This document shows positions 6,850 through 57,995 of a stretch of DNA of 57,995 nt, piece after piece. The stretch covers positions 27,279,411 to 27,337,405 of the forward strand of contig NC_068986.1 of assembly GCF_001194135.2 (NCBI RefSeq), in the 5' to 3' direction. Within the stretch, counting starts at the first letter, position 1, and every line of letters starts with the position of its first letter. The notes below the pieces were generated by a model. That model saw only the letters and a program-made list of their open reading frames with translations, was not told where the DNA came from and searched no databases. The position numbers were made by a program, and so were the translations under genes. The DNA comes from Octopus bimaculoides. Its lineage: Eukaryota.

Positions 6850-7240
6850 AGGCACTGGTGTGGTTATGTGCTTAAGAAGCTTACCTTTCGACCATGTGGT
6901 CTTGGGTTCAGACCCATTGCATGGCTTTTTAGGTGTCTTCTACTGTAGGCCTGGGCCAACCAAAGCCTTTTAAGTGGATTTGATAGATGGGAACTCAAAG
7001 AAGTCTTGTGTGTGTGTGTGTCCTTGTCTAGACATCACATTATGGTTGTACATGTGCATCATCATTATCATACAAACAAGAAATCCATGTCAAGCTGTGA
7101 AGAAATATTACTGTGCTTGGAAACAGGTGAGGGTTGATGACAGGAAAGGCATCTGACTGTAGAAAATCTGCTTCAACAAATTCTGTCTGACCCATGCAAG
7201 CATGGAAAAAGGAACATTAAATGATGGTGATGATGATGAT
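6850..7240 (+). mobile_element. SINE family A with RTE-type (GAT)n tail
   Basis: Head ggttcagacccattgc...ccaaccaaagcctt...gatgggaactcaaagaag, internal (GT)n, tail aaggcatctgactgtagaaaatctg...cccatgcaagcatggaaaa...(GAT)n. Confidence 0.8.
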
Positions 7241-10837: not shown

Positions 10838-11185
10838 TGCCAGATCAGATTGGAGCCTGTTACAGCCTTCTGGCTTGCCAGCCCTCAGTCCAACCCATGC
10901 TGACATGGAAAACAAATGTTAAACGATGATGATGATGATATAAATGGCGCCATGTTAAATGGCATACATGCCAGAACTGTGTCGAGAGCACCGTTGTTAA
11001 TGCCACACAAAGGCACTCAGTACACTCTATAAAGTGGTTGGCATTAGGAAGGGCATCCGGCCTTAGAAACTGTACCAAAACTGATGACTGGTATCTGGTG
11101 CAGTCCTCTGGCTTGCCAGCTCCTGTCAAACTGTCCAACCCATGCCAGCATGGAAAATGGATGTTAAATGATGATGATGACGATA
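10838..11185 (+). mobile_element. Two tandem 5'-truncated RTE-type 3' tails
   Basis: Both units match 33460-33616 (gattggagcctg...gtccaacccatgc..catggaaaa...gttaaa(gat)n). Confidence 0.8.
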
Positions 11186-11591
11186 TGTTATTATCTTTGT
11201 CATAAGAGGTGACTAAGAAGTTTGTCATCAAAGTAGGCCTTAAAAAACAGTCTCATCTAACCCATTCCAATATGAGAAACAGGCATAACACCGATTATGA
11301 TGATATGCTGTCTAATTTTGTGTGTGTGTGTGTGTATCTGTCACTCAGTCCAGAGTACTATACTATTCAGCCTCATGCATTTTTTGTATTGGTTCCACCT
11401 GGTTCCGGAATATTGAAGTCCAGTTGTTGTGTTATTGTATAGTATTTATTGTCTGTTAGACATTTCTGGTACTGTATATTGGTACTGTCATGAAATTTAA
11501 ACTCATGAATAATCTACTGTGTTCTATTTGAATATTCAAAATTGTCATTATGTACAGATGTAACTGTACATTTATGAAAAGATGCTATGTT

Positions 11592-13190: not shown

Positions 13191-13785
13191 TCTTTGTAAT
13201 TTTTTTTCTTTTTCGTTGTATTTTTTTTCTTGTTTTCCTTTGCCTTATACTCTAATCTAAAGAGTAAATGTAATAGGAATAGTGAGACAAAACAATAAAT
13301 AAATACATAAAATAAAAAAAGGAATAAAATAGAAGAACCAAGCAAAAATAAATAAATACATATATATATATATATAAAATGAATGTAAATAAAAAAAAAG
13401 AAGAAAATAATACACATACAAAACAACCACACACATGCACATACATACGCATAAGAAACTAGAAATAGCAAAGGAGGAAATAATAAAAACTAAATAAATA
13501 AATGAAAGAGAAAAAAGTAGTTATATGAGAGGAGAAGAAGAAATGGAGTTTTCCCTAGCTGCTTTGGAATCTTATTCCAAACTGCCACAGCTTGCAGATT
13601 TCTGATTACCATGTAAAAACCTGTCTGCTGGTCAATGATTGATGACAGTTTTCAGTAGGGAGTGTAAAATGTTATTTTCAGGTGCTGACAGAATTCTGTT
13701 GCCTGGTAACTGTCAGCTTTATTACTCCCTTCTTGCTCAATCCACCAACACCAATATCAAGCTGAATACCTACCACTCTACTTAC

Positions 13786-13830
13786 CAAATCTATCCACCC
13801 AGTTCAAGACTTCAGATTCAATAATATTGG
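13786..13830 (-). CDS. Candidate 45-nt symmetric (phase 1-1) coding exon, (A)NIIESEVLNWVDRF
   Basis: Very strong acceptor (tttttttcttttttttcttttttcctccag) and perfect donor TTG|GTAAGT. Length divisible by 3, and only one frame is stop-free. Protein not recognised. Confidence 0.5.
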
Positions 13831-15319: not shown

Positions 15320-15717
15320 GATTACCATCATCCCTTTAGCTTTCACTTTTCCATGCTTGTATGTGTTAACTGGAGTTAAATGAGGCAGATTTTCTATGGC
15401 CAGATACCCATCCTGTTTCCAACCTTTATTTGTTTCTAAGCAAGGTAATATTTCCCTGTTGTCATACATGCATTAGCAGAATATTGGAAATCAAGAACAC
15501 TGCTTGCATGGCAGTGACGCTCACAACTATCACATACTGTCAAGCCAAGCAAATAAACATAGACACATATACGATGGGTTTCTTTCAGTTTCGATCTGCC
15601 AAATCCTCTCACAAGGTTTTGATTGGCTTGAGGCTATAATAGAAGGTACTTGCCCAAGGTGCCATGTAGTGGGACTGAACCCAAAATCATGTGGTAGTTT
15701 GGAAGCAAACTTATACC
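15320..15717 (-). mobile_element. SINE family A (minus strand) with RTE-type tail
   Basis: Reverse complement of the family A head at 15560-15717 and of the tail toward 15320. Confidence 0.7.
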
Positions 15718-15830
15718 TGTTATATCCTTTCAAACTATCCAGTCCATGCTAGCATGGCAGAAAAATGTTATGAGATCTTGATGATGGTGGCAACCCATTC
15801 ACACTGACTGATCATGACACTTGTAGACAA

Positions 15831-16148
15831 GAGTTGGAGGACAATCTTAATATCCTCAACTAAAAGATCTGGTTGTTGTGCTCATAACAAAGTAGTCTCT
15901 GCCAAAAGCACCTCAAGAGCCAAGTGATAACGTTAAATTGGCTGATGGTTAATTCTATCACTCTAGCTCCACATTTCCATACTTTGTCAGGTTTATGCAA
16001 ACTAAAATGAATGTCAACTAAATTGGACCTAACTCTGTAAATATTTCAAGTATTTTATGTCAAACTTTCAAAGATCAAACTACTATGAAGCTGATTATTC
16101 AAAGCTGTTCAGATTAATTATTGATCACTAGAAAGTAAATATTTCAGT
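15831..16148 (+). repeat. Left arm of long inverted repeat (partner 17690-18012)
   Basis: Hand alignment to the reverse complement of 17690-18012. The inner ~100 nt differ at only about 4-5 positions; the outer part is more diverged. Confidence 0.92.
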
Positions 16149-17113
16149 AAAGTGGCATTGGATAGCATTTTCTTGTTTTTGTTTAATTTAAAAAAAAAAT
16201 TTTTTAACTTGATTTAAATTGTAGAGAATTTATATGTGGAAAAGAGTGTGTATGTATGTGTATTATATGTAATGTTGCTTTGTTGAATTAAATAATGCAT
16301 GATGTGTATGTGCATAGATAAACATATTCATGTTTGTGAATTTATGCATGTATGTATGAGCTTTTGTACACATGCTTTTCTACCAAACTTTTCTGGTTCA
16401 TTATTGATGTTGTATAAGTGAACTGAGCTGCCATGTCAGTTGACATAATATTTTTGCCTTGTTCTTGGGTTGTCAAGTTATGTGCTTCATTCATTTATCA
16501 TCCCTGTTGATAGCTACAGGTGTTACTAAAAAGATAGTCTATTTTACAAATGCCAAATTGATTTTATGTCTGTTTCTATGCAATAATTCTTAATTCCTTA
16601 AATCCTAAGACTTCCTCTTACCACCACACATGTCGAAATAGCAGTATTAACTGTTGTACTCTTTGTTCCCAAAGCAGACTTTTTAATACATGTGTAAACA
16701 AACACCTATCTGTGGGTGGTGACTTCCTAAGACACAGCCATAAAATTTTCAGCAGTATATATGCTATATGAATGAAAATTAGCCATGTGATCAATAAGTA
16801 CACCTAGCTACAGGTATTGTCATATCGACCATAATTGTCATGAATTAATTAATTACTTGCTACAGTAAGTAATTGGTTCATGCCAGTTAACATATTTTGA
16901 GCAACTTTTTACAGGCAGCCCCCCCCCCCTCCATATTATCTAGCTAGCAGTATCATGCAAGATTGGGACCACTAATTCTATTGTTTCTATGTCTTATTCT
17001 GAAATTCTAGGGGGGAAAAAAAACATACCAAGCAATCTTTCTTCAGAACTGTAATTGACTTTGTTTCTTGTTACCTGTTCTTTGTTGAAATTGGGTTTCA
17101 TTCTGTCTGTCTT

Positions 17114-17165
<52 letters not shown>

Positions 17166-17689
17166 GCACACACACATTACAATATGTGCTTTAAATTATC
17201 TTTCATACGTGTTTTATATGGTGCTGAAAACTAAATTTCAAGTGGTCAGCTGATTTTATATTTTTTTCAAGATGCTTTAATAATATCGTTTGGTGTCATC
17301 CTGCTCTTCTTCATTTATGTTTCTAAGTGAAAGCATTAAATTTTTATCATGTCATATTTCGGAAAAAAAGGTTATTTGTTTTTGGAATTGATTAATGATA
17401 AACTGTTTTTTATTTTATTCTTTATTTTTTAATTGCCATTTATTGAAACATCTCAGGTTTTCATTTTTTAAAATTTGTTCCATTATTTCACATGCTGCTA
17501 TTTTTTCTTTCCCTTAGAAATTTACAAAAGTCAGTTGTGACTCTACTGCTAAGATTTACTTTGGAAACAGTTATATTACGCATAACAAACATGTACATAG
17601 AACACGTATCTTTCTCCATATAAAATTTCTACAATTCAAACCAAGTTAAATAAATAAATAAATGAATAAAAATCATTTAACATCAATTG

Positions 17690-18012
17690 ACTGAAATATT
17701 TACTTTCTAGTGATCAATAATTAATCTGAACTGCTCTGAATAATCAGCTTCATAATAGTTTGATCTTTGAAATTTTGACATAAAATACTTGAAAAGATCT
17801 ATAGTGACAGTTTTAATTTGCTTGACATTCATTTTAATTTGCATAAACCAGAAAATGTATGGAAATGTGGAGTTTGGGTAATAGGGATAACCATCGGCCA
17901 ATTTCACGTCCCCACTTGGCTCTCAGGGTGCTTCTAGCTAAGACCACTCAGTTATGGGCACTTCAACCAGGAAGATCTTTTGTCTGAGGATTTCAAGATT
18001 GTCCTCCAATTC
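17690..18012 (-). repeat. Right arm of long inverted repeat (partner 15831-16148)
   Basis: actgaaatatttactttctagtgatcaataattaatctgaac is the exact reverse complement of the end of the left arm. Confidence 0.92.
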
Positions 18013-20390
18013 TGCCACCAATTTCAAAAGTTACCGTCCATCTAACTCTCACAAAATCTCAAAAGAAAATGTCTATATAGCCTGGAGCAAAATTCTTCAT
18101 TCTACATCTCTTATATGCTACATTTCAATTTGGAATCGGTGATTTCTGAAATATTGTTAATAATAATTCTTATTGTTTATATCTTTGTTATCTTTTGTCT
18201 TGTTGTTTGGATCAATATGAGTTCAGACATTGATAGTTCTTATGTGGCTTCAGTGAAGTGTATTGTTTAAAGTCTAAATGACCATTATATCCAATGGTAG
18301 CTTCATCTATAGAAATTTCCATGTGTGAATTATGAGTACTGTTAAAATTATTTTGCAATATATCCTTGAAATATGTTTGAGTGTGTGAAGTTCAAAAAAT
18401 TTTTTTTCATGCATTTTCCATTGCCTTCTTGTATATTTAGTAGCCATGTCAGTTACATCTGGATTTTTTTTTTATACTGGCATGCATTGGACAGTGCTTC
18501 TTGAGATTGTAGTCTATGGGTTTTAGGACGGATGCTCTTAAAGCCAGTCCTTGTGTTTTAATTGAGGCATTCCACTGGGATTTGCATATTGAATTACTGA
18601 GCTATGGGGCATATTATGTATGTAGGACATAAAAATCACTGTGACTCGATGGTATCAATGTGGAGGCACATTGAAACAAATGCACATGTACACACATCCG
18701 TACATTATGGGCTTCCATACAGTTTCCATGTATCAAATTTTATAAAGCATTATATTGTAGAAAACATTTCTCCAAGTGCCACACTATATGATTGAACACA
18801 AAACCATGTTGTTGAGAAACTTTTTATCCACACAGCTATGCTTTTTTATCCACATAACTATATTTGTCAGAAAAAATATACTAAAAAATTCTTGCTGCTT
18901 TATCTTTGTCCATATTTTAATGGATCCTGACATCAATTCTGAAGACTGAAAAATCTTTACAGCATGAAGTTAATGGCGCCATTTGTTTACATCAGTTTCT
19001 TTATTGTCTTTATTCCCATCTACATGCTAATACTTATCTGTATCAGTTATATTAAAACTGAAAGTATTTCTCTGTATTTTCAACATCTTGAGAGAAAAAT
19101 GTAAAGTTTATAGTTGGAACTACTTGGCATCAATTGAATAGCAGGTGTCAATGTTAACAACAACAAAAAGATGTATATGCCTGAGGGAGTTAAAAAAAAA
19201 GTGCTGGAATACTAAGATTGTACACCAAATATCAATAGTAGCTATTATAGAATAGTTTTCAAGTGATCAGAATGAAAACATTTCATGCCAGTTAAGCATA
19301 TAAATCAATAAAATAATCATAATATTTTAATCACGAAATATCTTAAAATCTAGTGTCAATGAACATTTTTCTACAAGAAATATCTCATTATCAGAGTGCA
19401 GCATTTTGTCACAAGCTAAGGCATTAGAAGCAATGATTTCTTCTAATTATCTGTTTCAGGTGTGCACATAGATTTGTTTGTTTGCAAATTTTGTCTTTGT
19501 TTGCAAAGTATTTGCTTATCTATATGAGTAACCATTGCTCAATTGCTATATTGACCACTTAAGTAAATATACTCCATTTTATAAGCGTATATCATTTTAA
19601 AGATTTTATTAAGTTGATGGAATTGTTAACACATTGGACAAAATGCTTAGTGGCATTTCTTCCAGTTCTTTGCATTCTGAGTTCAAATCCTTTCTAGGCC
19701 AACTTTGCCTTTCATCCTTTCAGGATCAATAAAATAAAATACTACTCAAATAATGGGTCCAGTGTAATTGGGTTGCCCCTACCCTCCCAAAATTTCTGGA
19801 CTTGTGCCATAATTAGAATTATTTAAGATTTTATTATGAACTTATACAACTAAATAAGTTCATTTTGAAAACCTACCTTATATGCACTCAATTGTTCCTT
19901 TGTACATTAGTTGTAAAACATGTGTGTATGGAAGCACATAACTCAGAAGGATCATTGGTAAGTGTTAACTTCTAATTATGTATACTGCTGTTTTATTACC
20001 AGTAAAAGGGTTACAAATTTATTGAATTTCTAGTAAGACAGATGATTTCTGGGCTTCAAATGGAAAATACATAGAAGTGATTCCTTATTGCCTTTCTCTC
20101 AGCTGTAGAAATGTCTTGAAGTTTGTATTGCAAGCAAAAAGATTAATTGAAATTATAGATGTTGCTGTTACCTACAATGAACTGTATCAACTCCTAGTGT
20201 CAATTCTAGACGAGCTGGACCACAAAAAGTTGTGTCGCTGACCTTGGTCACAGAAAAGAGCCAGTGATAGTACAATACCCAATCAGTATAATTTGTTTTA
20301 TGTTCATTTTGTCATGATAGCATCGGTTATATGAATATGCATTGAGGCATAGTTTTGCAGCTGGATGCCTTTCCTCTTGCTCACCCTTAC

Positions 20391-26837: not shown

Positions 26838-28189
26838 ACTACCTCTGCCTTCACTAAGGAGGAGGTATTGTTTTTAGTCATGTTTGTTTGTTTGTCCGTG
26901 AACAAGATATCTCAAGAATCGCTGTATGGATTCAGATGAAACCTTCAGGGATGTTTGGCCTCATAACTGACAGAAACTGATTAGATTTTGGGATCGATTC
27001 GGTACCAGACAAGCATTTTGGATTATTTGTTATATTTACTTTACTTTACATATTTACTTTACGTCCCCGTAACTTCGCGGTTCGGCAAAAGAGACCGATG
27101 GAATAAGAACTAGGCTTACAAAGAATAAATCCTGGGGTCGATTTGCTCGACTAAAGGCGGTGCTCCAGCATGGACGCAGTCAAATTACTGAAACAAGTAA
27201 AAGAGTAAAAGAGTATTATTAGGGTGATGGATTCTTTAGTATGTCGGACTATCGGACTAACAATACCAACTACCTTGTAACATTTCTTCTGGTTCTTTAT
27301 ATTCTGAGTACAAATCCCACTGAAGTTGACTTTGCCTTTCATCCCTCTCTGGGGTCCAGTAAGTAAAGTACCCGTCAAGTACTATGGCTCATTTAATGGA
27401 CTAATTGCTTTGAGCATGTATTAAAAACAAGAATTATCATTGTTATTTACATACCTTCATCTGTGACCTGCACTAGAAAATATTTCTCAATAATCAATGT
27501 GCGTGAGTGTGTATATAATGTGGTGGATGGTTCCCTTGTATATGTGCTGAGGTGAATTAGTAATCTTTAGCATTTACATAGTTATTGAATAAATAGATCC
27601 CTTCTTCCATACCCATTAGGCTAATGTGTGCACACACACATGCGCGCTTGCACACATACATACATGCGTGCATGCTTGCACACATGCATATTGAAATTAT
27701 GCAAATTTTATAAACATAACAATTTCTTTTCATGCTTTCTTTACTCTCTGTATGTTTATGACCCTGCTGTTTTTTCTTCTTCTTAAATCATGTTGTGTGT
27801 ATTGCATACCATCGACAAGCTAGTTTTGAATCCTTCCAGTTATCAATCTGATCAGCTAAACTGAAGGCCAGCTGCAAAATTGAAAGAGATTATTATGTAT
27901 GATGTAGTTAGTTAGTTCTAGTATAAAACCTTCACCTCAATCTACTTGCCCAGGGATGGTGGACCAGGACCAGTAAAAAAGAGGAAAGAAATAAGTCTTT
28001 CTTATATGAGTGGACCTTGTAACATTCCCTAACAGCGCCTCTTAACACTTTTCTGTCACCTCCACCACAACTTGACCACAACTACAATAGTCAATTGCTT
28101 GTTGGTGAGTCCCTTGTAGTTTGAGAAAGAGTGTTCTGCAATCTCTTGCTGAACAACCTGCGCAAATGATTCATTTATAGTGATAAAAT

Positions 28190-28400
28190 ATATATGCTGA
28201 TCAAATATATGTGCTTACTCTCTCCAACAAACTGATGTTGCCCGAGCAAGTGCACAGTGTACCACATGTGAGGTACTGAAGTGATCACAGAGCAATGTCA
28301 GATGAAGGGTTTTGCTCAAGAACACAATGCACCACCTGATCCAGAGATTGAAACCATGATTGTGAGATTGCGAGTGCAACAGCCCTAACCACTAGGCCAT
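28190..28400 (-). mobile_element. tRNA-headed SINE family C fragment
   Basis: Reverse complement gives gcatggcctagtggttagggctgttgcactc...ggtttcaatctc (A/B-box-like); related copies at 53400-53630 and 55640-55860. Confidence 0.7.
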
Positions 28401-28565
28401 GCACTCTCACACAACAATCAGTGATGTACCATCATCACCACTACTGCCTCCTCTGCCATCACCACTGCCTCCCATGCATTCGTCAGAATCTACATTGACA
28501 TCATCACCTTCAACACCAATTATGTGGTTGGGAAGCAAGCTTCTTACCACAAAGCCACTCATGCG

Positions 28566-33141: not shown

Positions 33142-33633
33142 TTAACCCTTTTGATGCTGACCTGCCTGACACTAACCCTTGGTTCTATGATACAAATCTG
33201 TTTATCAAAACTTTCCATCAAAATTTCTTATTGATTTCCTAACGCCCGCTCCAGGCGATGACTACTGACCGAGACCTTTGGAAATGTGCTGTGCATGAGA
33301 AGACCTGGCAAGCCAAGTGAGATCGTTGCCAGTGCCCCTGGACTGGCTCTTGTGCGGGTGGCACATAAAATACACCATTTTGAACGTGGCCGTTGCCAGT
33401 ACCGCCTGACTGGCCCTCATGCGGGTGACACGTAAAAGCACCCACTACACTCTCGGAGTGGTTGGCGTTAGGAAGGGCATCCAGCTGTAGAAACTCTGCC
33501 AAATTAGATTGGAGCCTGGTGTTGCCATCCGGTTTCACCAGTCCTCAGTCAAATCGTCCAACCCATGCTAGCATGGAAAGCGGACGTTAAACGATGATGA
33601 TGATGATGATGATGATGGTAACAAAAGTATTAA
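33142..33633. mobile_element. TTAA-flanked MITE interrupted by an RTE insertion
   Basis: Left end TTAAcccttttgatg (33142); right end ggtaacaaaagtaTTAA (33633). The segments match the MITE at 39229-39463, with the RTE fragment between them. Confidence 0.65.
33241..33616 (+). mobile_element. 5'-truncated RTE-clade LINE 3' end (ORF C-terminus + 3' UTR + (GAT)n tail)
   Basis: 33258-33320 encodes MTTDRDLWKCAVHEKTWQAK*, matching the DR..W C-terminal motif typical of RTE ORFs. CpG-rich 3' UTR and short tandem-repeat tail. Confidence 0.8.
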
Positions 33634-42340: not shown

Positions 42341-42854
42341 AGGTTTCGTCCACTTTGAACTTTAAACTCAAACCAAACGATAACAAAGGAGATCTACTGC
42401 AAGCAGCTTGAGTGGCTTAAGCACTAGAAGAAAATCAACCATCTTTGGTTTCAAGATGAAAGATGTTCTTCTATCAGGATAATACTCAGCCACATACAGC
42501 GAGGATGACATTCCAAAGGCTGGAGCAGTTTGAATGGGAAATGATGCCCTACCCACCATATTCACTGGACATTGCCCCATCTGATTATCATTTATTCCGC
42601 AGTCTTCAAAATCATTTGGACAGAGAAAATATAAATTCTGTAGACAAGGTCAGAACAGTACTGGAGGAGTATTTTTTTTGTCATGGACAAATGAATTTTG
42701 GAAGAAGTGCCTTGCAAGTCTACCAGGTAGATGGAAGAGCATTGTAGAAAATGAAGGAGAGTATATTTTAGATTAAGAAAGAACTTTGTTTATCTTCATT
42801 TTGAAAAATAAAAGAAGTATAAAAAAACTGCATTATTTATGGGATGACCCAATA
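42341..42854 (+). mobile_element. Mariner (DD34D-type) transposase 3' fragment with right TIR, pseudogenised
   Basis: GFVHFEL/NSNQTITKEIYCKQL/ALEENQPSLVSR*KMFFYQDNTQPHTA...EWEMMPYPPYSLDIAPSDYHLFRSLQNHL matches the mariner motifs HDNARPH and HPPYSPDLAPSDY. Ends ttatgggatgacccaa-TA. Confidence 0.92.
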
Positions 42855-46405: not shown

Positions 46406-46984
46406 TGTCCAACACATGCAAGCATGGACCATGAACATTAAATGATAATGAAATATATATAATTTGGGGTTTAAATATGTATGTCTTCAATATTTTTAAT
46501 GGATTTAGAAATGCTTAATGTGTTCAAGCATTAACTGTTTTCATGTTCATTCTGTTTTGTTTTCAAGAAGTTTTGAAATACCAATCTTGAGTATAGGTTT
46601 AGATTGTTCTTGAAGTCTTATATAACCAATAGATTATCCAACCACTTTTTTTTTCAAAGCCATATAAGATTTAAAATAATGCAGTCTCTAAATGTCATAC
46701 TTTTTACATAGTTTAATTCCATTAAGTCTTTCATATAAAGTGTACAATTATTTCTGTAGGCTTGTTTTGATGTCCTCTTATCTGAATAATTCTTAAGAGA
46801 TTATCTTGCATTATGGTTCACTTTTGCATTTCCTGACACTCATTTAAACAGTGGTAGTTACTGATTTTCTTGGGTACTGTCCAAAATAGTAATTTCTTAA
46901 GGAAGCCCCCATCATGAAACTTGCTACACTGTAACCAGTGAAATTCTATTCACATTTAATTTCTTCAATATATCAAGACCCAGT

Positions 46985-47368
46985 GTGGAGGCGCAATGGC
47001 CCAGTGGTTAGGGCAGCGGACTCGCAGTCATAGGATCGCGGTTTCGATTCCCAGACCGGGCATTGTGAGTGTTTATTGAGCGAAAACACCTAAAAGCTCT
47101 ACGAGGCTCCGGCAGGGGTGGCGACCGCTGCTGTACTCTTCCACCACAACTTTCTCTCACTCTTACTTCCTCTTTCTGTTGTGCCTGTAATTCAAAGGGT
47201 CAGCCTTGTCACACTGTGTCACACTGAATATCCCCGAGAACTACGTTAAGGGTACACGTGTCTGTGGAGTGCTCAGCCACTTGCACGTTAATTTCACGAG
47301 CAGGCTGTTCCGTTGATCGGATCAACTGGAACCATCGACGTCGTAAGCGACGGAGTGCCAACAACAAA
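46985..47368 (+). mobile_element. Young full-length tRNA-derived SINE with 13-bp TSD
   Basis: tRNA-like head ggcgcaatggcccagtggttagggcagcggactcgcagtcataggatcgcggtttcgattccc (A and B boxes); CpGs intact; (ACA)n tail; TSD atcaagacccagt at 46972-46984 and 47369-47381. Confidence 0.93.
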
Positions 47369-49871
47369 ATCAAGACCCAGTATTAATTCTCTAGCTGTGT
47401 ACTCATGATACAATAAAATCACTTTCTGCATGATGCAAATATTTGAGTTTGGTAGACTAATCAGTAGTTACTAAGTAGCTCATTCACACGACCATTTTAC
47501 CTTCATAGATGAGGTGACAGATATCAGTTCATTACATGACTTACATATTCCATTTGAGTTAAATTTTTAATCAGGACAGACCTACCAGTTCACTATCATT
47601 ACAGTTTACTCCACACTCCGTTTATTAATTACAACCACCATACAGATTTTTAATTTGTTCACTAATTTCCATCTTCACCTCTGACCATTTCACAACTGTT
47701 GCTTGTTTCAAGACTTTATTACTATTTCACCTGCAACTCTTCTTCCTCCACTACAGGTCTTCACCAACTTCATTAATTCATGCTGTCGATTTCAAGAGAG
47801 TTAAATCTATTTCTGGGGAAAACAAACTATTGTAAATCCAATGAAGTTACTTAAAATAATCCACTCTGAACCAGTTAGCAATGGTGGCATTTCACCCGGT
47901 TCTCTCTTGTGGCAAATTGACCAAGGTCCAGATGACTGTTGTTGGAAATTGATCAGAGTCAGTTACTTGCTGTGGTGGTTTTTCCCCCCAAGCTGTGACA
48001 AATCCAATATAGCCATTTTTATCAGTGGAGTCCATTTCATTTGGTCAGTATGGAAAAAAGTCTTCCTTTGAACATTTCTCCTGAAATAATGCAGTCCTAG
48101 ATACTCTATTTCTGGGAAAAGAGAAGAAAAGGGGAAGAAAACAAAAAAAGGAAGATAGGATGGTCACAAGCCTTTGATCACATGTCTGCTTGATCAAGGC
48201 TGACCTGGATCTAAACAACAAACCCCTACTTATGCTTACACTGCACCCCCTATTCTCTGCTTTCCTGGTTATGTTTTTTTTATCCAACTCACACACTCTC
48301 ACTCATGCATGTGTGCATGCATACATACATACATATATGCACACAAAAGATCGACTTCTATACACCTTTCCACCTGCTAGAAATATATAACTGTCTCTTG
48401 TTACTTGGAATTGAAACTCCTTTGAGATTTATGTATTGGATTGTAAGTCTCTTTTATGGCTGGGAATCCATGGTGAATGGAAGTGGCGGCTGCAGTGGTG
48501 CTGATGGTAGTGGTGGTGGTGGCAGCAGCGGTGTGTGTGTGTGTGTGTGTGTGTTCGGAATAATATAAATAAAAAATAAGCAAACTGTTGATTCCTGCTT
48601 GTCTTATTGTCAGCTGGCCAATGAAATATGGATAATTGCATTGCTGTGGGTTGTGGCATGGTCAACTGAATTACCTACCCTCTTTCCCACCATCCACAAC
48701 TCTAACTCCCTATTCATCTTCGCCCACACTCACGCCCACAAAATCCACCCCACCTGCAGCAATCTGGATACTATTATTTATTCATATCCAATACAGCCCC
48801 CTCTCATACCCTGTCCTCTTTGATATAATGCTTCTGTTCCTCTCACACTTCATCGCTCTCTCTCTCTATCTCTCTCTCTCTCTCTCTCTCTTTCCATTTG
48901 TTTGTCCAACTCAATAAGTATTCCCTCTTAAATTTTCTTTCTCTGCTTTTTAACTGTGCTGCTACCCCCACTCCGCATCCATTTCTCCCTCACCTTATTT
49001 TTGCTATTTTTTTCCCTTCATCCTGTCCTATTATTTTCTTTATTCATTCTAATTTTCTTTCTCTGTACATCCTCACCATATATATTTATCTATTGGCCTG
49101 TCTGTTTGACTGGCTATTGCTATTTCTACTTGTCTGTCTATTGACTGACTTTTATTTCTCTGTCTCCAGTTTTCTACATGTCTGTTTGTCTACTTACCTG
49201 TCTGTCTACCTACCTACCTGTCTGTCTACTTGTCTGTCTGTCTCTTTACTTGTTTGTCTGTCTACTTGTCTATCTGTCTCTCTACTTGTCTGTCTGTCTG
49301 CTTGTCTATTTGTCTTTCTGTTTCTACACTTTCTTAGTTTCTACACTGCTGAGTATCTGATTTTTTTTTTTAACCATCTGCCTGACTATCTGTCTACCTG
49401 TCTGACTGACTTCCTATTTATCAGCCTGTCACTATGTCTCAGCCTCTTTCCTTTACTCTGTCTCTCTCCCTCTCCTCCTTCTCTCCCTCTCCTCCTTCTC
49501 TCCCTCCCTCTGTGTCTTTCATTTCTTATTTTTACAGATATCACAAAAAAACTGACATGTCCTCTCTTCAGAACATTACCACCACCGGCTCTCCACCCCA
49601 ACCCCCGTGTTGTCTTTGAAGAATATTCCACCCATCATTCTTTAAAATGTTGTTACATCACCATTTTTTTATATAATTCATTGACAGACCGCACTCCTCC
49701 TGTCCCTTCCCCCAAACCTAAACTTACATGTACCTTTCTTTCTGAACTCTGACATTTGTTCTACACTGTTGGAGCTGCTTCTTCTCATAAGACATGTCAT
49801 AAATGGTCTCATACAGATCACTTCTTATATCATACACATACATATATACATGCACACAAAGTGTACATACA

Positions 49872-53032: not shown

Positions 53033-53630
53033 TTATTAACACTGCTGCTATTGGTAATGATGATGATTAACATGTTAGTTTGCTTTTTAACAATTCTTTT
53101 CTGGTGAAAACAAAAGGAAATTGAAGCAGCTAAGGTGTCATGTGATCATCTTGAACTTCATATTTCATTTCATATTACGAAGTATATATATTTTAACTTT
53201 ATGTGTGTCAGTTCATCTAACTGTCTGGCATAGGAGGCTATCTGGGAATTCTACAATGGGACTTATGCAGATGGCACAGGCTATCTGAGAATTAATTATG
53301 CAATAATAGTTTAGTTCTCAGTTCAGGAAGAAAATTTGCCTCTTACATGCTTCATGTTATAGAATCTTTGACCATTGGTTCATTTGATCAAGACTGACTG
53401 GGGTTAGGAGGCAATAAGTTCCCAGTGACCAACCAGACTATCAGATGCTGTTACACATTGCTAGTCACAATGCATTTTGCACTGTTTTTTTTAGCCTTCG
53501 AATGATGCCAACTTCTTGGCTAGGTCAGCAAGCCAATATTCCCTCCCTGATTGAAAAGGGAACCGGAGCAACGTGAAGTGAAGTGATTTGCTCAAAAACA
53601 CAATGTGTTCATGAGTGCAACAGCCTAACT

Positions 53631-53919
53631 TGTGGTGTATGCATGCGAGTAGAAGTAATCAACTTACCTCGGTTTTCCTTCCTTTGCACAAGTCTGTCCT
53701 GCGGTATCCGATCCTTGCGGCTCGCCCGACCCGAGGAACACTAGAAATAGCAGCTGCTTCTCCCAACACCTAGACGATCGGTTGGCACGTCCTCTCGTCA
53801 CAACAACCCTGTTCGAAAAGGGCATGAAATCCCGATCAAGTCTTCCTCTTCCGGTTGGCTCGCCGTTCCGGTCAGTTCACGGTTCCGGTCAGCTCCCCAG
53901 TCACTGACGTCATACCACA
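53631..53919 (-). mobile_element. Solo-LTR-like insertion (289 bp) inside a SINE head
   Basis: TG...CA ends with inverted TGTGGT/ACCACA; 5-bp TSD taact/taacc (4 of 5). Removing it restores the SINE-C sequence cctaaccactagg. Strongly CpG-rich compared with its flanks. Confidence 0.8.
53849..53912 (-). promoter_or_regulatory. CRE plus three ETS-type motifs within the LTR-like element
   Basis: TGACGTCA at 53905-53912; CCGGAA on the minus strand at 53883-53888, 53866-53871 and 53849-53854 (ACCGGAAG). Activity not demonstrated. Confidence 0.5.
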
Positions 53920-54200
53920 TAACCACTAGGAGATAGTAATGGAAATGGTTTCTAATGACCAAAATAGGCCCCACTCCAACAGTGTCCAAGTTCTTTTTAA
54001 AAATATCCCTTCTCTTTATCTCACAAGGGAAAATGTATATAATACTAGTAAGTGGAATAAAATAAGTTTTATAGGTTTCAGGTATTGGTTTGTGGCCCTG
54101 CTGTCATTATCATTATGCCCTCTCTATTATATGATGATACCATTGATACAAGTATGTAATTTTAATATCATGTTTGTTTGTCTATATATCTGTCTGTCTA

Positions 54201-55324: not shown

Positions 55325-56243
55325 GTAAGTATGAGGAGAGAAATGAATAAGAAGAATTTAAGTATAATCCTCTCAGTTTTGCTGAATCATACTTTTCTAT
55401 TTTTAAAAGAAATTAAATGACAGGAGAGATTGCTTCTGAGGAATTTAATGTGACATTTTGAGGCTTTCATACATATCTCCCAGTCACTCATAAGCAATGC
55501 TTATAACTAAATTCTAACTGAACCAACGAAAGAGCCCTTGTATGGTCACTCCACCAATTAGAAATTGCAGCCAAGTCTCCCACAGGCCACTATATCATCA
55601 TCAACGCCTAACATTACTGTCTTTAACCCTAGGATTCATAGGACTAGTTAGCCAGTTTCCATTGGTGTATAAGTGATTGAGATTACAATGCTACTCCTGA
55701 ATGGGATACCAATCAGTCGCAGGGTAACTCAACTATAACTGAGTTGACTGGAACAATATGAAATTAAGAGTTTTGCTCAGGATCACAATGCACCACTTAC
55801 TTTGGGAATTGAAATGGTAATCTTGTGATTATGAGTGCAACGGCCTAGCCACTGGTCACTACCCCATCATCTTAAACAAAAAAAAAAAAAGACACATTAT
55901 AGAACAGTGCTCCGCAGCCAATATATATTTGTAGTTCAGGTGTGCTGCCAAATTTTGAAAAGTCTATAAGTGTACCGCAAGTGAAAAAAGGTTTGGAGTA
56001 CTGTTGTAGAATATGTTCTCTAGTGCACTATATCTCAAATTAAGATGGAATGGTTAAAGCTTGAATGCTTTTGAGCATAGGTAATCACAGCTTACCAAGC
56101 ATGGCATCTAAATTTAAATGGGTGTTCAGTTGAAGTGAAGGTGAACTGTGGCTTTTACCCATTTTGGAAGTCAGTGAAGCAAGTATCAATAATCCATGAG
56201 AGTGTTTGGAGAGAAATTGTAATTTTGGTTTTATTTAATATAC

Positions 56244-56463
56244 CATCATCATCATCATCATTTAACGTCTGCTGTCCATGCTGGCATGGGTGGGATGGCT
56301 TGACTGTGGTAGCATGCTGGAAGGCTGTGCCAGGCTCCAGTCTCATTTGGCATGGTTTTCTATGGCTGGATGCCCTTCCTGACACCAACCACTCTGAGAG
56401 TGTAATGGGTGCTTCTACATGCCACCAGCACGGGTGCCATTTGCATGACACCAGCATCTGCCA
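56244..56463 (-). mobile_element. RTE-type 3' tail fragment
   Basis: Reverse complement of the 33440-33616 sequence, with a (CAT)n tail. Confidence 0.8.
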
Positions 56464-56723
56464 CTTGCTGATAAATAATCTCATGTTTATGATGGTGTAA
56501 GAAAATGGAAATTTAGCAACTATATAAATTTCCCAACCTGTATAACCTATGCAAGTACGTTTGTATGTATGCATGGACACAACCATGGTTGTGTGGTTAG
56601 GAACTCTCCCTGAATTTGAATTTTTCCTTATTTTGTTTTATTTCTTTTATTTTTTACCCTTGTAATTATAGAAGAGTCAGTGTAATGTCTGTCTACAGCT
56701 GTATTTCAGGTGATAGAAAAAAA

Positions 56724-56963
56724 GGCAGCGAGCTGGCAGAAACGTTAGCTCGCCGGTTGAAATGCATAGCGGTATTTCGTCTGCCATTGCGTTCTGAGTT
56801 CAAATTCCGCCGAGGTCGACTTTGCCTTTCATCCTTTCGAGGTCGATAAATTAAGTACCAGTTATGCACTGGGGTCGATGCAATCGACTTAATCCCTTTG
56901 TCTGTCCTTGTTTGTCTCCTCTATGCTTAGTCCCTTGTGGGCAATAAAGAAATAAGAAATAAG
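56724..56963 (+). mobile_element. Young full-length SINE family B
   Basis: ggcagcgagctggcagaaacgttag...ttctgagttcaaattccgccgaggtcgactttgcctttcatcc...; CpGs retained; (aagaaat)n tail. Confidence 0.9.
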
Positions 56964-57257: not shown

Positions 57258-57642
57258 TCAGACATGGCTGTGTGGTTAAGAAGTTCCATTTCCTGACCAT
57301 ATGGTTTCAGGTTCAGTCCCACTGTGTGGCATGCTGGACAAGTGTCTTCTACTTAAGCCCTTGGCTGATCAAAGCCTAGCGAGTAGTTTTGGTAGGTGGA
57401 AACTGAAAGAAACCTGCCATACTTGTCTTGACATTGCATGATAGGTGTAAATGAATGTCATCATTATACAAACAATATCATTTGTTTTCAATCTCGTCAT
57501 GGGAAAATATTACCTTGCTTGGAAACATGAGAGGGTTAGCAGCAGAAACAGCATCTGGCCATAGACAATCTGCCTCAACAATTTCGCTTGGCTCATGCTG
57601 GCATGGAAAAGTGGATGTTAAAATGATGATGATGATGATGAT
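57258..57642 (+). mobile_element. SINE family A with RTE-type (GAT)n tail
   Basis: Head matches 25441-25590; tail matches the 7075-7240 and 33460-33616 type. Confidence 0.8.
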
Positions 57643-57995
57643 ATATATTATTGGTCCTAAATAAACTAACTTGAGTAAACTGCTATATGGATTAAAAAAA
57701 AACAAACTCCAACTGAAATTGGAAAATATAGTGCTTTGGACAAAATGATGTGTTCAAAAGAAACATTACATTTTATTAAATATGGAGAGGAAAAAAAAGA
57801 AAAAGACATAACAGCATAAAGAAATTGTCTAAGAGATTTATATATGAATCTAGCAAACTAAAGAGAATTGATATCTAAGAAAATGAAAATACAATAATTA
57901 ATATAAATGAAAAAAAATATCAAAAATATAACTGTATTTGAAATATAAAGTACAGAGAAGAACTACTTAAAAACAAAGAAATATATATATATATA

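What the first reader, a model, noticed from the sequence alone, without database searches (positions are those of the whole stretch)
53626..53924. Young solo LTR carrying a ready-made promoter-exon cassette (CRE + 3 ETS sites + ATG ORF + perfect donor)
The element inserted into the A-box of a SINE head with a 5-bp TSD. On the minus strand it reads TGACGTCA, three CCGGAA motifs (two within an 11-bp direct repeat), an ATG at 53825 opening 52 codons (MPFSNRVVVTRGRANRSSRCWEKQLLF...), and GAG|GTAAGT at 53668. It points toward the minus-strand acceptors downstream (48111, 27472, 22387, 13830). Each copy could therefore act as a portable cAMP/ETS-responsive alternative first exon, as is known for vertebrate ERV LTRs. 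No AATAAA is evident, so the LTR assignment rests on the ends and TSD.
Basis: partly seen in the sequence, partly recalled or inferred. Interest (0 to 1): 0.72.

Follow-up and report, generated by a model that had tools for sequence, protein, structure and literature searches.

The report
Probable solo LTR inside a SINE
A 289-base mobile-element insertion, most likely a lone retrotransposon LTR, split an older SINE and carries its own promoter-like motifs, but nothing shows that the host uses it, so it is an ordinary transposon relic.

Summary
A 289-bp GC- and CpG-rich block (53631-53919, sense on the minus strand) ends in TGTGG...CCACA. It is flanked by a 5-bp duplication, GGTTA/AGTTA, matching at 4 of 5 positions. 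A paralogous SINE copy in the same window (28180-28420) runs uninterrupted across the insertion point with one GGTTA, so the empty site is shown directly.

The CRE palindrome and three ETS-type cores are real and far beyond chance. The cores form a 3 x 17-nt tandem array. The ATG reading frame is at chance level. The donor-like GAGGTAAGT is present.

The best reading is a solo LTR of an LTR retrotransposon whose 5' third acts as a U3 promoter/enhancer. The LTR assignment rests on ends, duplication and asymmetry only. There is no second copy in the window, no gag/pol nearby and no AATAAA-like signal. None of the collections on hand covers this genome, so copy number could not be tested.

The window's repeats look cephalopod-like, not vertebrate, so "ERV" is unsupported. 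No downstream exon or transcript evidence supports the "alternative first exon" idea. The finding is ordinary: a new member of a known kind.

The parts
53631..53919 (-). Inserted element, 289 bp, probable solo LTR. Ends are TGTGG...CCACA. GC is 54% and CpG observed/expected is 1.03.
   Evidence: Sequence. It is the densest CpG block in the window. The empty site is shown by a paralogous SINE. Both termini fit the TGTNR pattern of Gypsy-type LTRs (PMC2836005).
53920..53924 (-). Upstream copy of the target-site duplication (GGTTA in minus sense). It matches the uninterrupted SINE paralogue.
53626..53630 (-). Downstream copy of the target-site duplication (AGTTA in minus sense). It differs from the other copy by one substitution.
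   Evidence: The join with one copy scores 51, with both copies 46 and with none 45.
53905..53912 (.). Palindromic CRE-type octamer TGACGTCA, 7 nt inside the 5' end of the element.
   Evidence: It is the only copy in the window. Expected number is 0.25. It appears in 0.7% of simulations of the element.
53849..53899 (-). Three tandem 17-nt units, each carrying an ACCGGAA (ETS-type) core. This is an enhancer-repeat-like array in the U3-like part.
   Evidence: the repeat finder family D1 has spacing 17, 17 and 71-76% identity. These are 3 of the 4 ACCGGAA sites in the window. Three or more CCGGAA appear in 0.04% of simulations.
53664..53825 (-). ATG-initiated frame. It runs 52 codons plus 2 nt to the donor at 53668. 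Unspliced it is 53 codons plus TAA. It is probably not coding.
   Evidence: 15% of simulations have a frame this long. No homologue. No Pfam family. Pyrimidine at position -3 and C at +4 (sequence).
53662..53670 (-). Donor-like GAG|GTAAGT. The last exon base would be 53668.
   Evidence: AGGTAAGT occurs 3 times in the window against about 2 expected. Within the element the chance is about 1%.
53487..53625 (-). 3' part of the interrupted host SINE: body with a CORE-like stretch and an A-run tail. Aligned to paralogues over about 53566-53625.
   Evidence: CpG observed/expected of the flanks is 0.33.
53925..53935 (-). 5' part of the interrupted host SINE (A-box-like ...CCTAGT, followed by the GGTTA of the duplication). 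The 5' limit is uncertain.
28180..28420 (-). Paralogous SINE copy that serves as the uninterrupted ('empty-site') reference.

Best explanation
The 289-bp block at 53631-53919 is a solo LTR. It is the remnant left when the two LTRs of an integrated LTR retrotransposon recombined. The superfamily is unknown, but the termini are Gypsy-like (TGTNR).

Shown:
- An integrase-type insertion went into the A-box region of an older tRNA-headed SINE and duplicated 5 bp (GGTTA).
- The element is sharply bounded and ends in TG...CA with a 6-bp perfect inverted repeat.
- It is much less CpG-decayed than the SINE it split.
- At one end it carries a CRE palindrome followed by three tandem 17-nt units, each with an ETS-type core.

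Inferred:
- The sense strand is the minus strand, because that puts the motif cluster in the first ~90 nt, as in a U3 region.
- The cluster is the element's own RNA polymerase II enhancer/promoter. It would be read by CREB/ATF-type and ETS-type factors, which are conserved across animals. Transcripts would start roughly at 53800-53850.
- The ATG frame and the GTAAGT donor are most likely incidental features of the R/U5-like part.
- Use as a host promoter or first exon is possible in principle but unsupported here.
For: - Empty site: a paralogous SINE reads straight through the junction with one GGTTA (z about 11 against shuffles).
- Termini are TGTGGTA.../...ACACCACA, matching TGTNR at both ends (pattern from PMC2836005).
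- The 5-bp duplication is within the 4-6 bp range of LTR elements (established knowledge).
- Both flanks are halves of one SINE, so no internal region, PBS or PPT is attached.
- None of the 58 longest non-simple ORFs of the window has a Pfam domain, so no gag or pol is nearby.
- The internal layout is asymmetric, with tandem enhancer-like repeats at one end only.
- The motif cluster is far beyond chance.
- CpG observed/expected is 1.03 in the element against 0.33 in its host SINE and 0.26 in the window.
- No RNA family or tRNA match.
Against: - No second copy exists in the window, and none could be looked for in the source genome. The family, its paired copies and its internal region are therefore unseen.
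- No TATA box and no AATAAA-like hexamer on the sense strand. An LTR normally needs a polyadenylation signal.
- At 289 bp it is at the short end for LTRs.
- The duplication is imperfect (4 of 5).
- A consensus splice donor inside an LTR is unusual.
Confidence: 0.6

Rival explanations
1. The inserted element, whatever its origin, now works as a host promoter with a spliced first exon for an unannotated transcript running leftwards on the minus strand. It is compatible with an LTR origin.
For: - The CRE plus triple ETS cluster is non-random.
- The frame is open from the ATG to a consensus donor.
- All 21 CpGs are intact in a locally CpG-depleted region, as expected for an unmethylated, active promoter.
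Against: - No recognisable exon lies downstream in 53 kb.
- The frame length is at chance level and has no homologue.
- Other young repeats in the window keep their CpGs equally well (0.86-1.14).
- If the host is an octopus, transposons are largely unmethylated anyway (PMC9476566). CpG retention then says little about promoter activity.
Confidence: 0.12
2. It is a short non-autonomous cut-and-paste DNA transposon moved by an integrase-like transposase (Ginger/TDD-like or similar), not an LTR.
For: - TGTNR termini are shared by Ginger elements and Gypsy LTRs. TDD-4 and TDD-5 make 5-bp duplications (PMC2836005).
- The element has a short terminal inverted repeat.
- There is no polyadenylation signal.
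Against: - Ginger TIRs are 40-270 bp, and metazoan Ginger elements make 4-bp duplications at CCGG or RTATAY targets.
- Here the inverted repeat is 6 bp perfect (9 of 11 with a gap), the duplication is 5 bp and the target is GGTTA.
- The interior is asymmetric, with a one-sided tandem motif array.
Confidence: 0.12
3. It is specifically the LTR of a vertebrate endogenous retrovirus.
For: - TG...CA ends and a 5-bp duplication.
- The window-wide CpG depletion of 0.26 is vertebrate-like.
- CORE-type SINEs also occur in vertebrates (PMC4824008).
Against: - From my own recollection, not a test, the window's abundant SINEs look like those of octopus genomes.
- tRNA-Core SINEs dominate octopus repeats (PMC8967140).
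- 34% GC, extreme microsatellite density and many gaps fit that too.
- No retroviral coding remnant is in the window.
Confidence: 0.1
4. It is a native host CpG-island promoter and first exon that never moved.
For: - CRE and ETS sites without a TATA box are typical of housekeeping-type promoters (established knowledge).
- It is single-copy in the window.
Against: - The block has sharp borders with an inverted TGTGGT/ACCACA repeat and a flanking 5-bp duplication.
- The two flanks join into one SINE that a paralogue shows uninterrupted.
Confidence: 0.03

Closest known systems
Solo LTRs of Gypsy, BEL/Pao and Copia retrotransposons, as catalogued in molluscs (PMC6238403)
   Same: TG...CA (TGTNR) ends, short terminal inverted repeat, 5-bp target duplication, length of a few hundred bp, promoter elements at one end, host DNA on both sides.
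   Different: No family, partner LTR or internal region has been seen for this one. No polyadenylation hexamer. The superfamily is unassigned.
Mammalian ERV and MaLR LTRs used as alternative promoters or first exons of host genes (my own knowledge)
   Same: A mobile unit that brings transcription-factor sites and, here, a donor-like site that could in principle splice to downstream exons.
   Different: The host is probably not a vertebrate. No chimeric transcript, downstream exon or chromatin evidence exists. The motif cluster is sufficiently explained as the element's own promoter.
Deltaretrovirus-type LTR layout: three tandem CRE-bearing repeats in U3, a splice donor in R and no nearby AAUAAA (my own knowledge, analogy only)
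   Same: A tandem triple repeat of factor sites in the 5' part, a donor inside the repeat, and no AATAAA close to the 3' part.
   Different: No sequence relationship was tested or claimed. The repeats here are 17 nt with ETS-type cores plus one separate CRE. The element is far shorter.
Ginger1 and Ginger2/TDD DNA transposons (PMC2836005)
   Same: TGTNR termini and a short target duplication made by a Gypsy-like integrase.
   Different: TIRs of 40-270 bp and 4-bp duplications at specific targets are not met here.

Membership tests
LTR of an LTR retrotransposon (solo LTR) | 5'-TG...CA-3' termini with a short inverted repeat (TGTNR in Gypsy-type elements) | tested here: met
   TGTGGTATG... and ...CATACACCACA. 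The inverted repeat is 6 bp perfect, or 9 of 11 with a 2-nt gap. The pattern comes from PMC2836005.
LTR of an LTR retrotransposon (solo LTR) | 4-6 bp target-site duplication, with the empty site recoverable | tested here: met
   GGTTA/AGTTA. The flanks joined with one copy align through the junction to the SINE paralogue at 28180-28420.
LTR of an LTR retrotransposon (solo LTR) | Solo state: host DNA on both sides, with no PBS, PPT or internal region attached | tested here: met
   Both flanks are halves of one SINE. No Pfam domain is found in any of the 58 longest non-simple ORFs of the window.
LTR of an LTR retrotransposon (solo LTR) | Member of a repeated family that includes direct pairs around a gag-pol interior | not testable with these tools
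   Single copy in the window. The protein search was empty, but so was the control with a high-copy repeat ORF. Viral and metagenome DNA scans were empty. The source genome is not in any collection.
LTR of an LTR retrotransposon (solo LTR) | U3-R-U5 organisation with a promoter and a polyadenylation signal | tested here: inconclusive
   A promoter-like CRE plus 3 ETS sites lie in the first ~90 nt. There is no TATA box and no hexamer within one mismatch of AATAAA on the sense strand.
Vertebrate endogenous retrovirus LTR | Vertebrate host and kinship to a retroviral gag-pol-env interior | not testable with these tools
   The host was not identified by any tool. The repeat content looks cephalopod-like (my recollection; consistent with PMC8967140). 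No retroviral remnant is in the window.
Ginger/TDD-type DNA transposon (non-autonomous copy) | Terminal inverted repeats of about 40-270 bp | tested here: not met
   Only 6 bp perfect, against the range given in PMC2836005.
Ginger/TDD-type DNA transposon (non-autonomous copy) | 4-bp duplication at CCGG/CCGT or RTATAY targets in metazoa | tested here: not met
   A 5-bp duplication of GGTTA.
Native host promoter with first exon | Native to the locus, with no insertion signature | tested here: not met
   Empty-site alignment plus the duplication and inverted termini.
Native host promoter with first exon | Transcripts start in it and splice from its donor | not testable with these tools
   No expression data are on hand. 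No downstream exon is recognisable.
tRNA-headed CORE-type SINE (the interrupted host element) | tRNA-like head with A and B boxes, conserved central domain, LINE-like tail | tested here: inconclusive
   The head and central stretch align to two paralogues. This copy lacks about 35 nt that cover the B-box region. ARAGORN and Rfam call nothing. CORE-SINEs are reported in octopus (PMC4824008, PMC4758252).

The most novel reading that the evidence does not exclude
The element belongs to a family of LTR-derived mobile units in a probably cephalopod genome. Each copy would deliver a CREB/ETS-responsive promoter together with a ready splice donor, so the family would seed alternative first exons or non-coding transcripts across the genome. 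This copy would be transcriptionally active.
Probability: 0.08. Interest if true: 0.55.

Novelty: new member of a known kind. Interest (0 to 1): 0.22.

Why it matters
LTRs carry promoters by definition, and solo LTRs are common debris. As it stands, this is a well-documented but ordinary insertion. It would matter only if expression data showed that copies of this family start spliced transcripts. LTR-driven promoters are well known in mammals but little studied in molluscs. The locus does have practical value: the insertion into a SINE with an in-window empty-site reference makes a clean presence/absence marker.

Tried and rejected
1. Looking for other copies.
   - Self-BLAST of the element against the window found only chance matches of 24 nt or less.
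   - An exact look-up of the 53-aa product found nothing.
   - A homologue search with the 70-aa stop-to-stop translation found nothing.
   - A control with a 121-aa ORF from a repeat present many times in this window also found nothing. An exact look-up of the mariner ORF was also empty. The protein collections therefore do not hold this genome's unannotated ORFs, and the negative result is uninformative.
2. Identifying the host.
   - The mariner fragment search returned only relatives of 59% identity or less, from insects, bats and metagenomes.
   - A literature search for SINE sequence strings found nothing.
   - The octopus genome paper is not held.
3. RNA gene or small-RNA-derived LTR. 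No Rfam match, even at E up to 10 over 53350-54150, and no tRNA. Rejected.
4. Host gene context.
   - An amino-acid-composition score over all frames of 35 aa or more found only low-complexity or repeat ORFs.
   - Pfam on the 58 longest non-simple ORFs gave one weak transposase hit unrelated to the finding.
I did not concatenate ORFs.
5. SINE duplication of its own. Only a 12-of-15 match was found, too weak to use.
6. Tandem Repeats Finder missed the 17-nt array. The repeat finder found it.
7. The bacterial promoter/terminator scan is irrelevant here.

Full report
**What is there.** The minus strand of 53631-53919 reads TGTGGTATGACGTCA...ATACACCACA and is 289 bp long.

- TGACGTCA at 53905-53912.
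- CCGGAA cores starting at 53888, 53871 and 53854.
- ATG at 53825.
- GAG|GTAAGT, with 53668 as the last exon base.

There is no AATAAA, ATTAAA or TATA. No hexamer within one mismatch of AATAAA occurs on the sense strand. The reading frame runs 52 codons plus 2 nt to the donor. If read through unspliced, it is 53 codons followed by a TAA that lies inside the donor motif.

**Is it an insertion?** Yes, and the window itself proves it. A paralogous tRNA-headed SINE at 28180-28420 (minus strand) reads ...CCTAGTGGTTAGGGCTGTTGCAC... without interruption.

I joined the two flanks of the finding with exactly one copy of GGTTA. The join aligns through the junction to that paralogue, with 22 of 22 bases around the junction identical and one 1-nt gap. 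The alignment then continues into a shared central stretch. The score is 51, against 18.3 +/- 2.9 for 300 shuffles. Keeping both duplication copies scores 46, and keeping none scores 45.

The duplication is therefore 5 bp. The upstream copy (GGTTA) is the original state, and the downstream copy (AGTTA) carries one substitution. The interrupted SINE lacks about 35 nt that the paralogues at 28180-28420 and 46976-47240 have in the B-box region. Its CpG observed/expected ratio is 0.33.

**Is the motif content more than chance?** I simulated 20,000 first-order Markov sequences of the element:

| Feature | Share of simulations |
|---|---|
| TGACGTCA present | 0.7% |
| three or more CCGGAA on one strand | 0.04% |
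| GGTAAGT present | 1.2% |
| all three together | never |
| ATG frame of 53 or more codons | 15% |

- TGACGTCA is the only copy in 58 kb, where 0.25 is expected.
- Three of the four ACCGGAA sites in the window are here.
- AGGTAAGT occurs three times in the window, against about two expected.
- The three ETS-type cores are not independent. They head three tandem 17-nt units at 53849-53899, with 71-76% identity between units. This is the pattern of a duplicated enhancer module.
- The frame has a pyrimidine at -3 and C at +4, no homologue and no Pfam family.

I take the CRE/ETS cluster as real, the donor as suggestive and the ORF as noise.

**What kind of element?** The block has five relevant properties:
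- Sharp borders.
- TG...CA ends that fit the TGTNR pattern shared by Gypsy-type LTRs and Ginger transposons (PMC2836005).
- A 6-bp perfect terminal inverted repeat, 9 of 11 with a gap.
- A 5-bp duplication.
- A strongly asymmetric interior, with the factor-site array confined to one end.

Ginger-type DNA transposons are the main alternative with such termini. They have TIRs of 40-270 bp and, in metazoa, 4-bp duplications at specific targets. Neither feature is met here. No RNA family or tRNA match exists, so a small-RNA-derived element is not indicated.

Both flanks belong to one SINE, so no internal region is attached. None of the 58 longest non-simple ORFs of the window has a Pfam domain, so no gag or pol is nearby.

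A solo LTR, sense on the minus strand, is the best fit. On that strand the CRE and ETS array occupy the first ~90 nt, as a U3 region would.

Four points count against it:
- No partner or family member is seen.
- No polyadenylation hexamer is present.
- The length is short for an LTR.
- A consensus donor inside the repeat is unusual.

**What could not be tested.** Copy number is the crux, and it is out of reach here. The element is single-copy in the window. The protein-space search was empty. A control with a 121-aa ORF from a repeat that occurs many times in this same window was empty too, and exact look-ups of window ORFs found nothing. The collections therefore simply do not hold this genome's unannotated sequence. 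Five exact-pattern scans of viral and metagenome contigs found nothing.

**Host and the 'ERV' label.** No tool identified the host. The window has the following features:
- 34% GC and CpG observed/expected of 0.26.
- Many microsatellites and 15 gaps.
- Many tRNA-headed SINEs.
- A mariner fragment and a weak piggyBac-type fragment.

From my own recollection, which is a lead and not a test, the SINE at 56727-56955 resembles the abundant octopus SINE. The literature is consistent with that. CORE-type SINEs were described in octopus (PMC4824008, PMC4758252). tRNA-Core SINEs dominate octopus repeats (PMC8967140). Gypsy, BEL and Copia elements are widespread in molluscs, including cephalopods (PMC6238403).

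If the host is an octopus, the element is an LTR retrotransposon remnant rather than a vertebrate ERV. CpG retention would also be a weak clock, because octopus transposons are largely unmethylated (PMC9476566). Still, old SINE copies in this window are CpG-depleted (0.18-0.33), while this element (1.03) and a few other repeats (0.86-1.14) are not. The element is therefore younger than the SINE it split. Whether it is 'young' in absolute terms is unknown.

**Function.** The most economical mechanism is that the CRE and the triple ETS array are the retroelement's own RNA polymerase II enhancer/promoter. This is inferred from motif identity, position and tandem duplication, and is not shown.

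That needs a downstream gene and transcripts. The four named acceptors are pyrimidine tract plus AG sites with stops in all frames soon after, or with no coding character. A composition scan and the Pfam scans found no host exon in the 53 kb downstream. No expression data are available. I rate co-option at this locus as possible but unlikely, at about 0.1.

**Verdict.** This is an ordinary transposon relic, a new member of a known kind, of low to modest interest.

Noticed in passing
window 42460-42744 (+): Mariner-type transposase C-terminal fragment. Relatives carry PF01359, and the best hit is only 59% identical.
   Followed up: partly
window 18215-18391 (-): Weak piggyBac-type transposase fragment (PF13843, E 6e-4, below the curated cut-off).
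   Followed up: partly
window 15830-16154 and 17684-18013: Large inverted repeat with arms of about 325 nt, 78-95% complementary, and about 1.5 kb between them. It could be a long-TIR transposon or an inverted duplication.
   Followed up: no
window 46976-47380 (+), 28180-28420 (-), 56727-56955 (+): tRNA-headed SINE copies of very different CpG decay: observed/expected 0.86, 0.18 and 1.14. The first two share their head and central stretch with the SINE that the finding interrupts.
   Followed up: partly
window 10863-11252, 33242-33544, 56081-56497, 7043-7216, 15370-15636, 57481-57753: A second high-copy repeat, seen as similar ORF translations on both strands. It has no Pfam family and no protein-database relative.
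   Followed up: partly
whole window: 15 assembly gaps totalling 3824 N, most of them bordered by microsatellites. Copies of any repeat could be hidden in them.
   Followed up: no
window 13785-13830 (-): A 45-nt open stretch between a pyrimidine tract plus AG and a GTAAGT, possibly a micro-exon. There is no supporting evidence.
   Followed up: no
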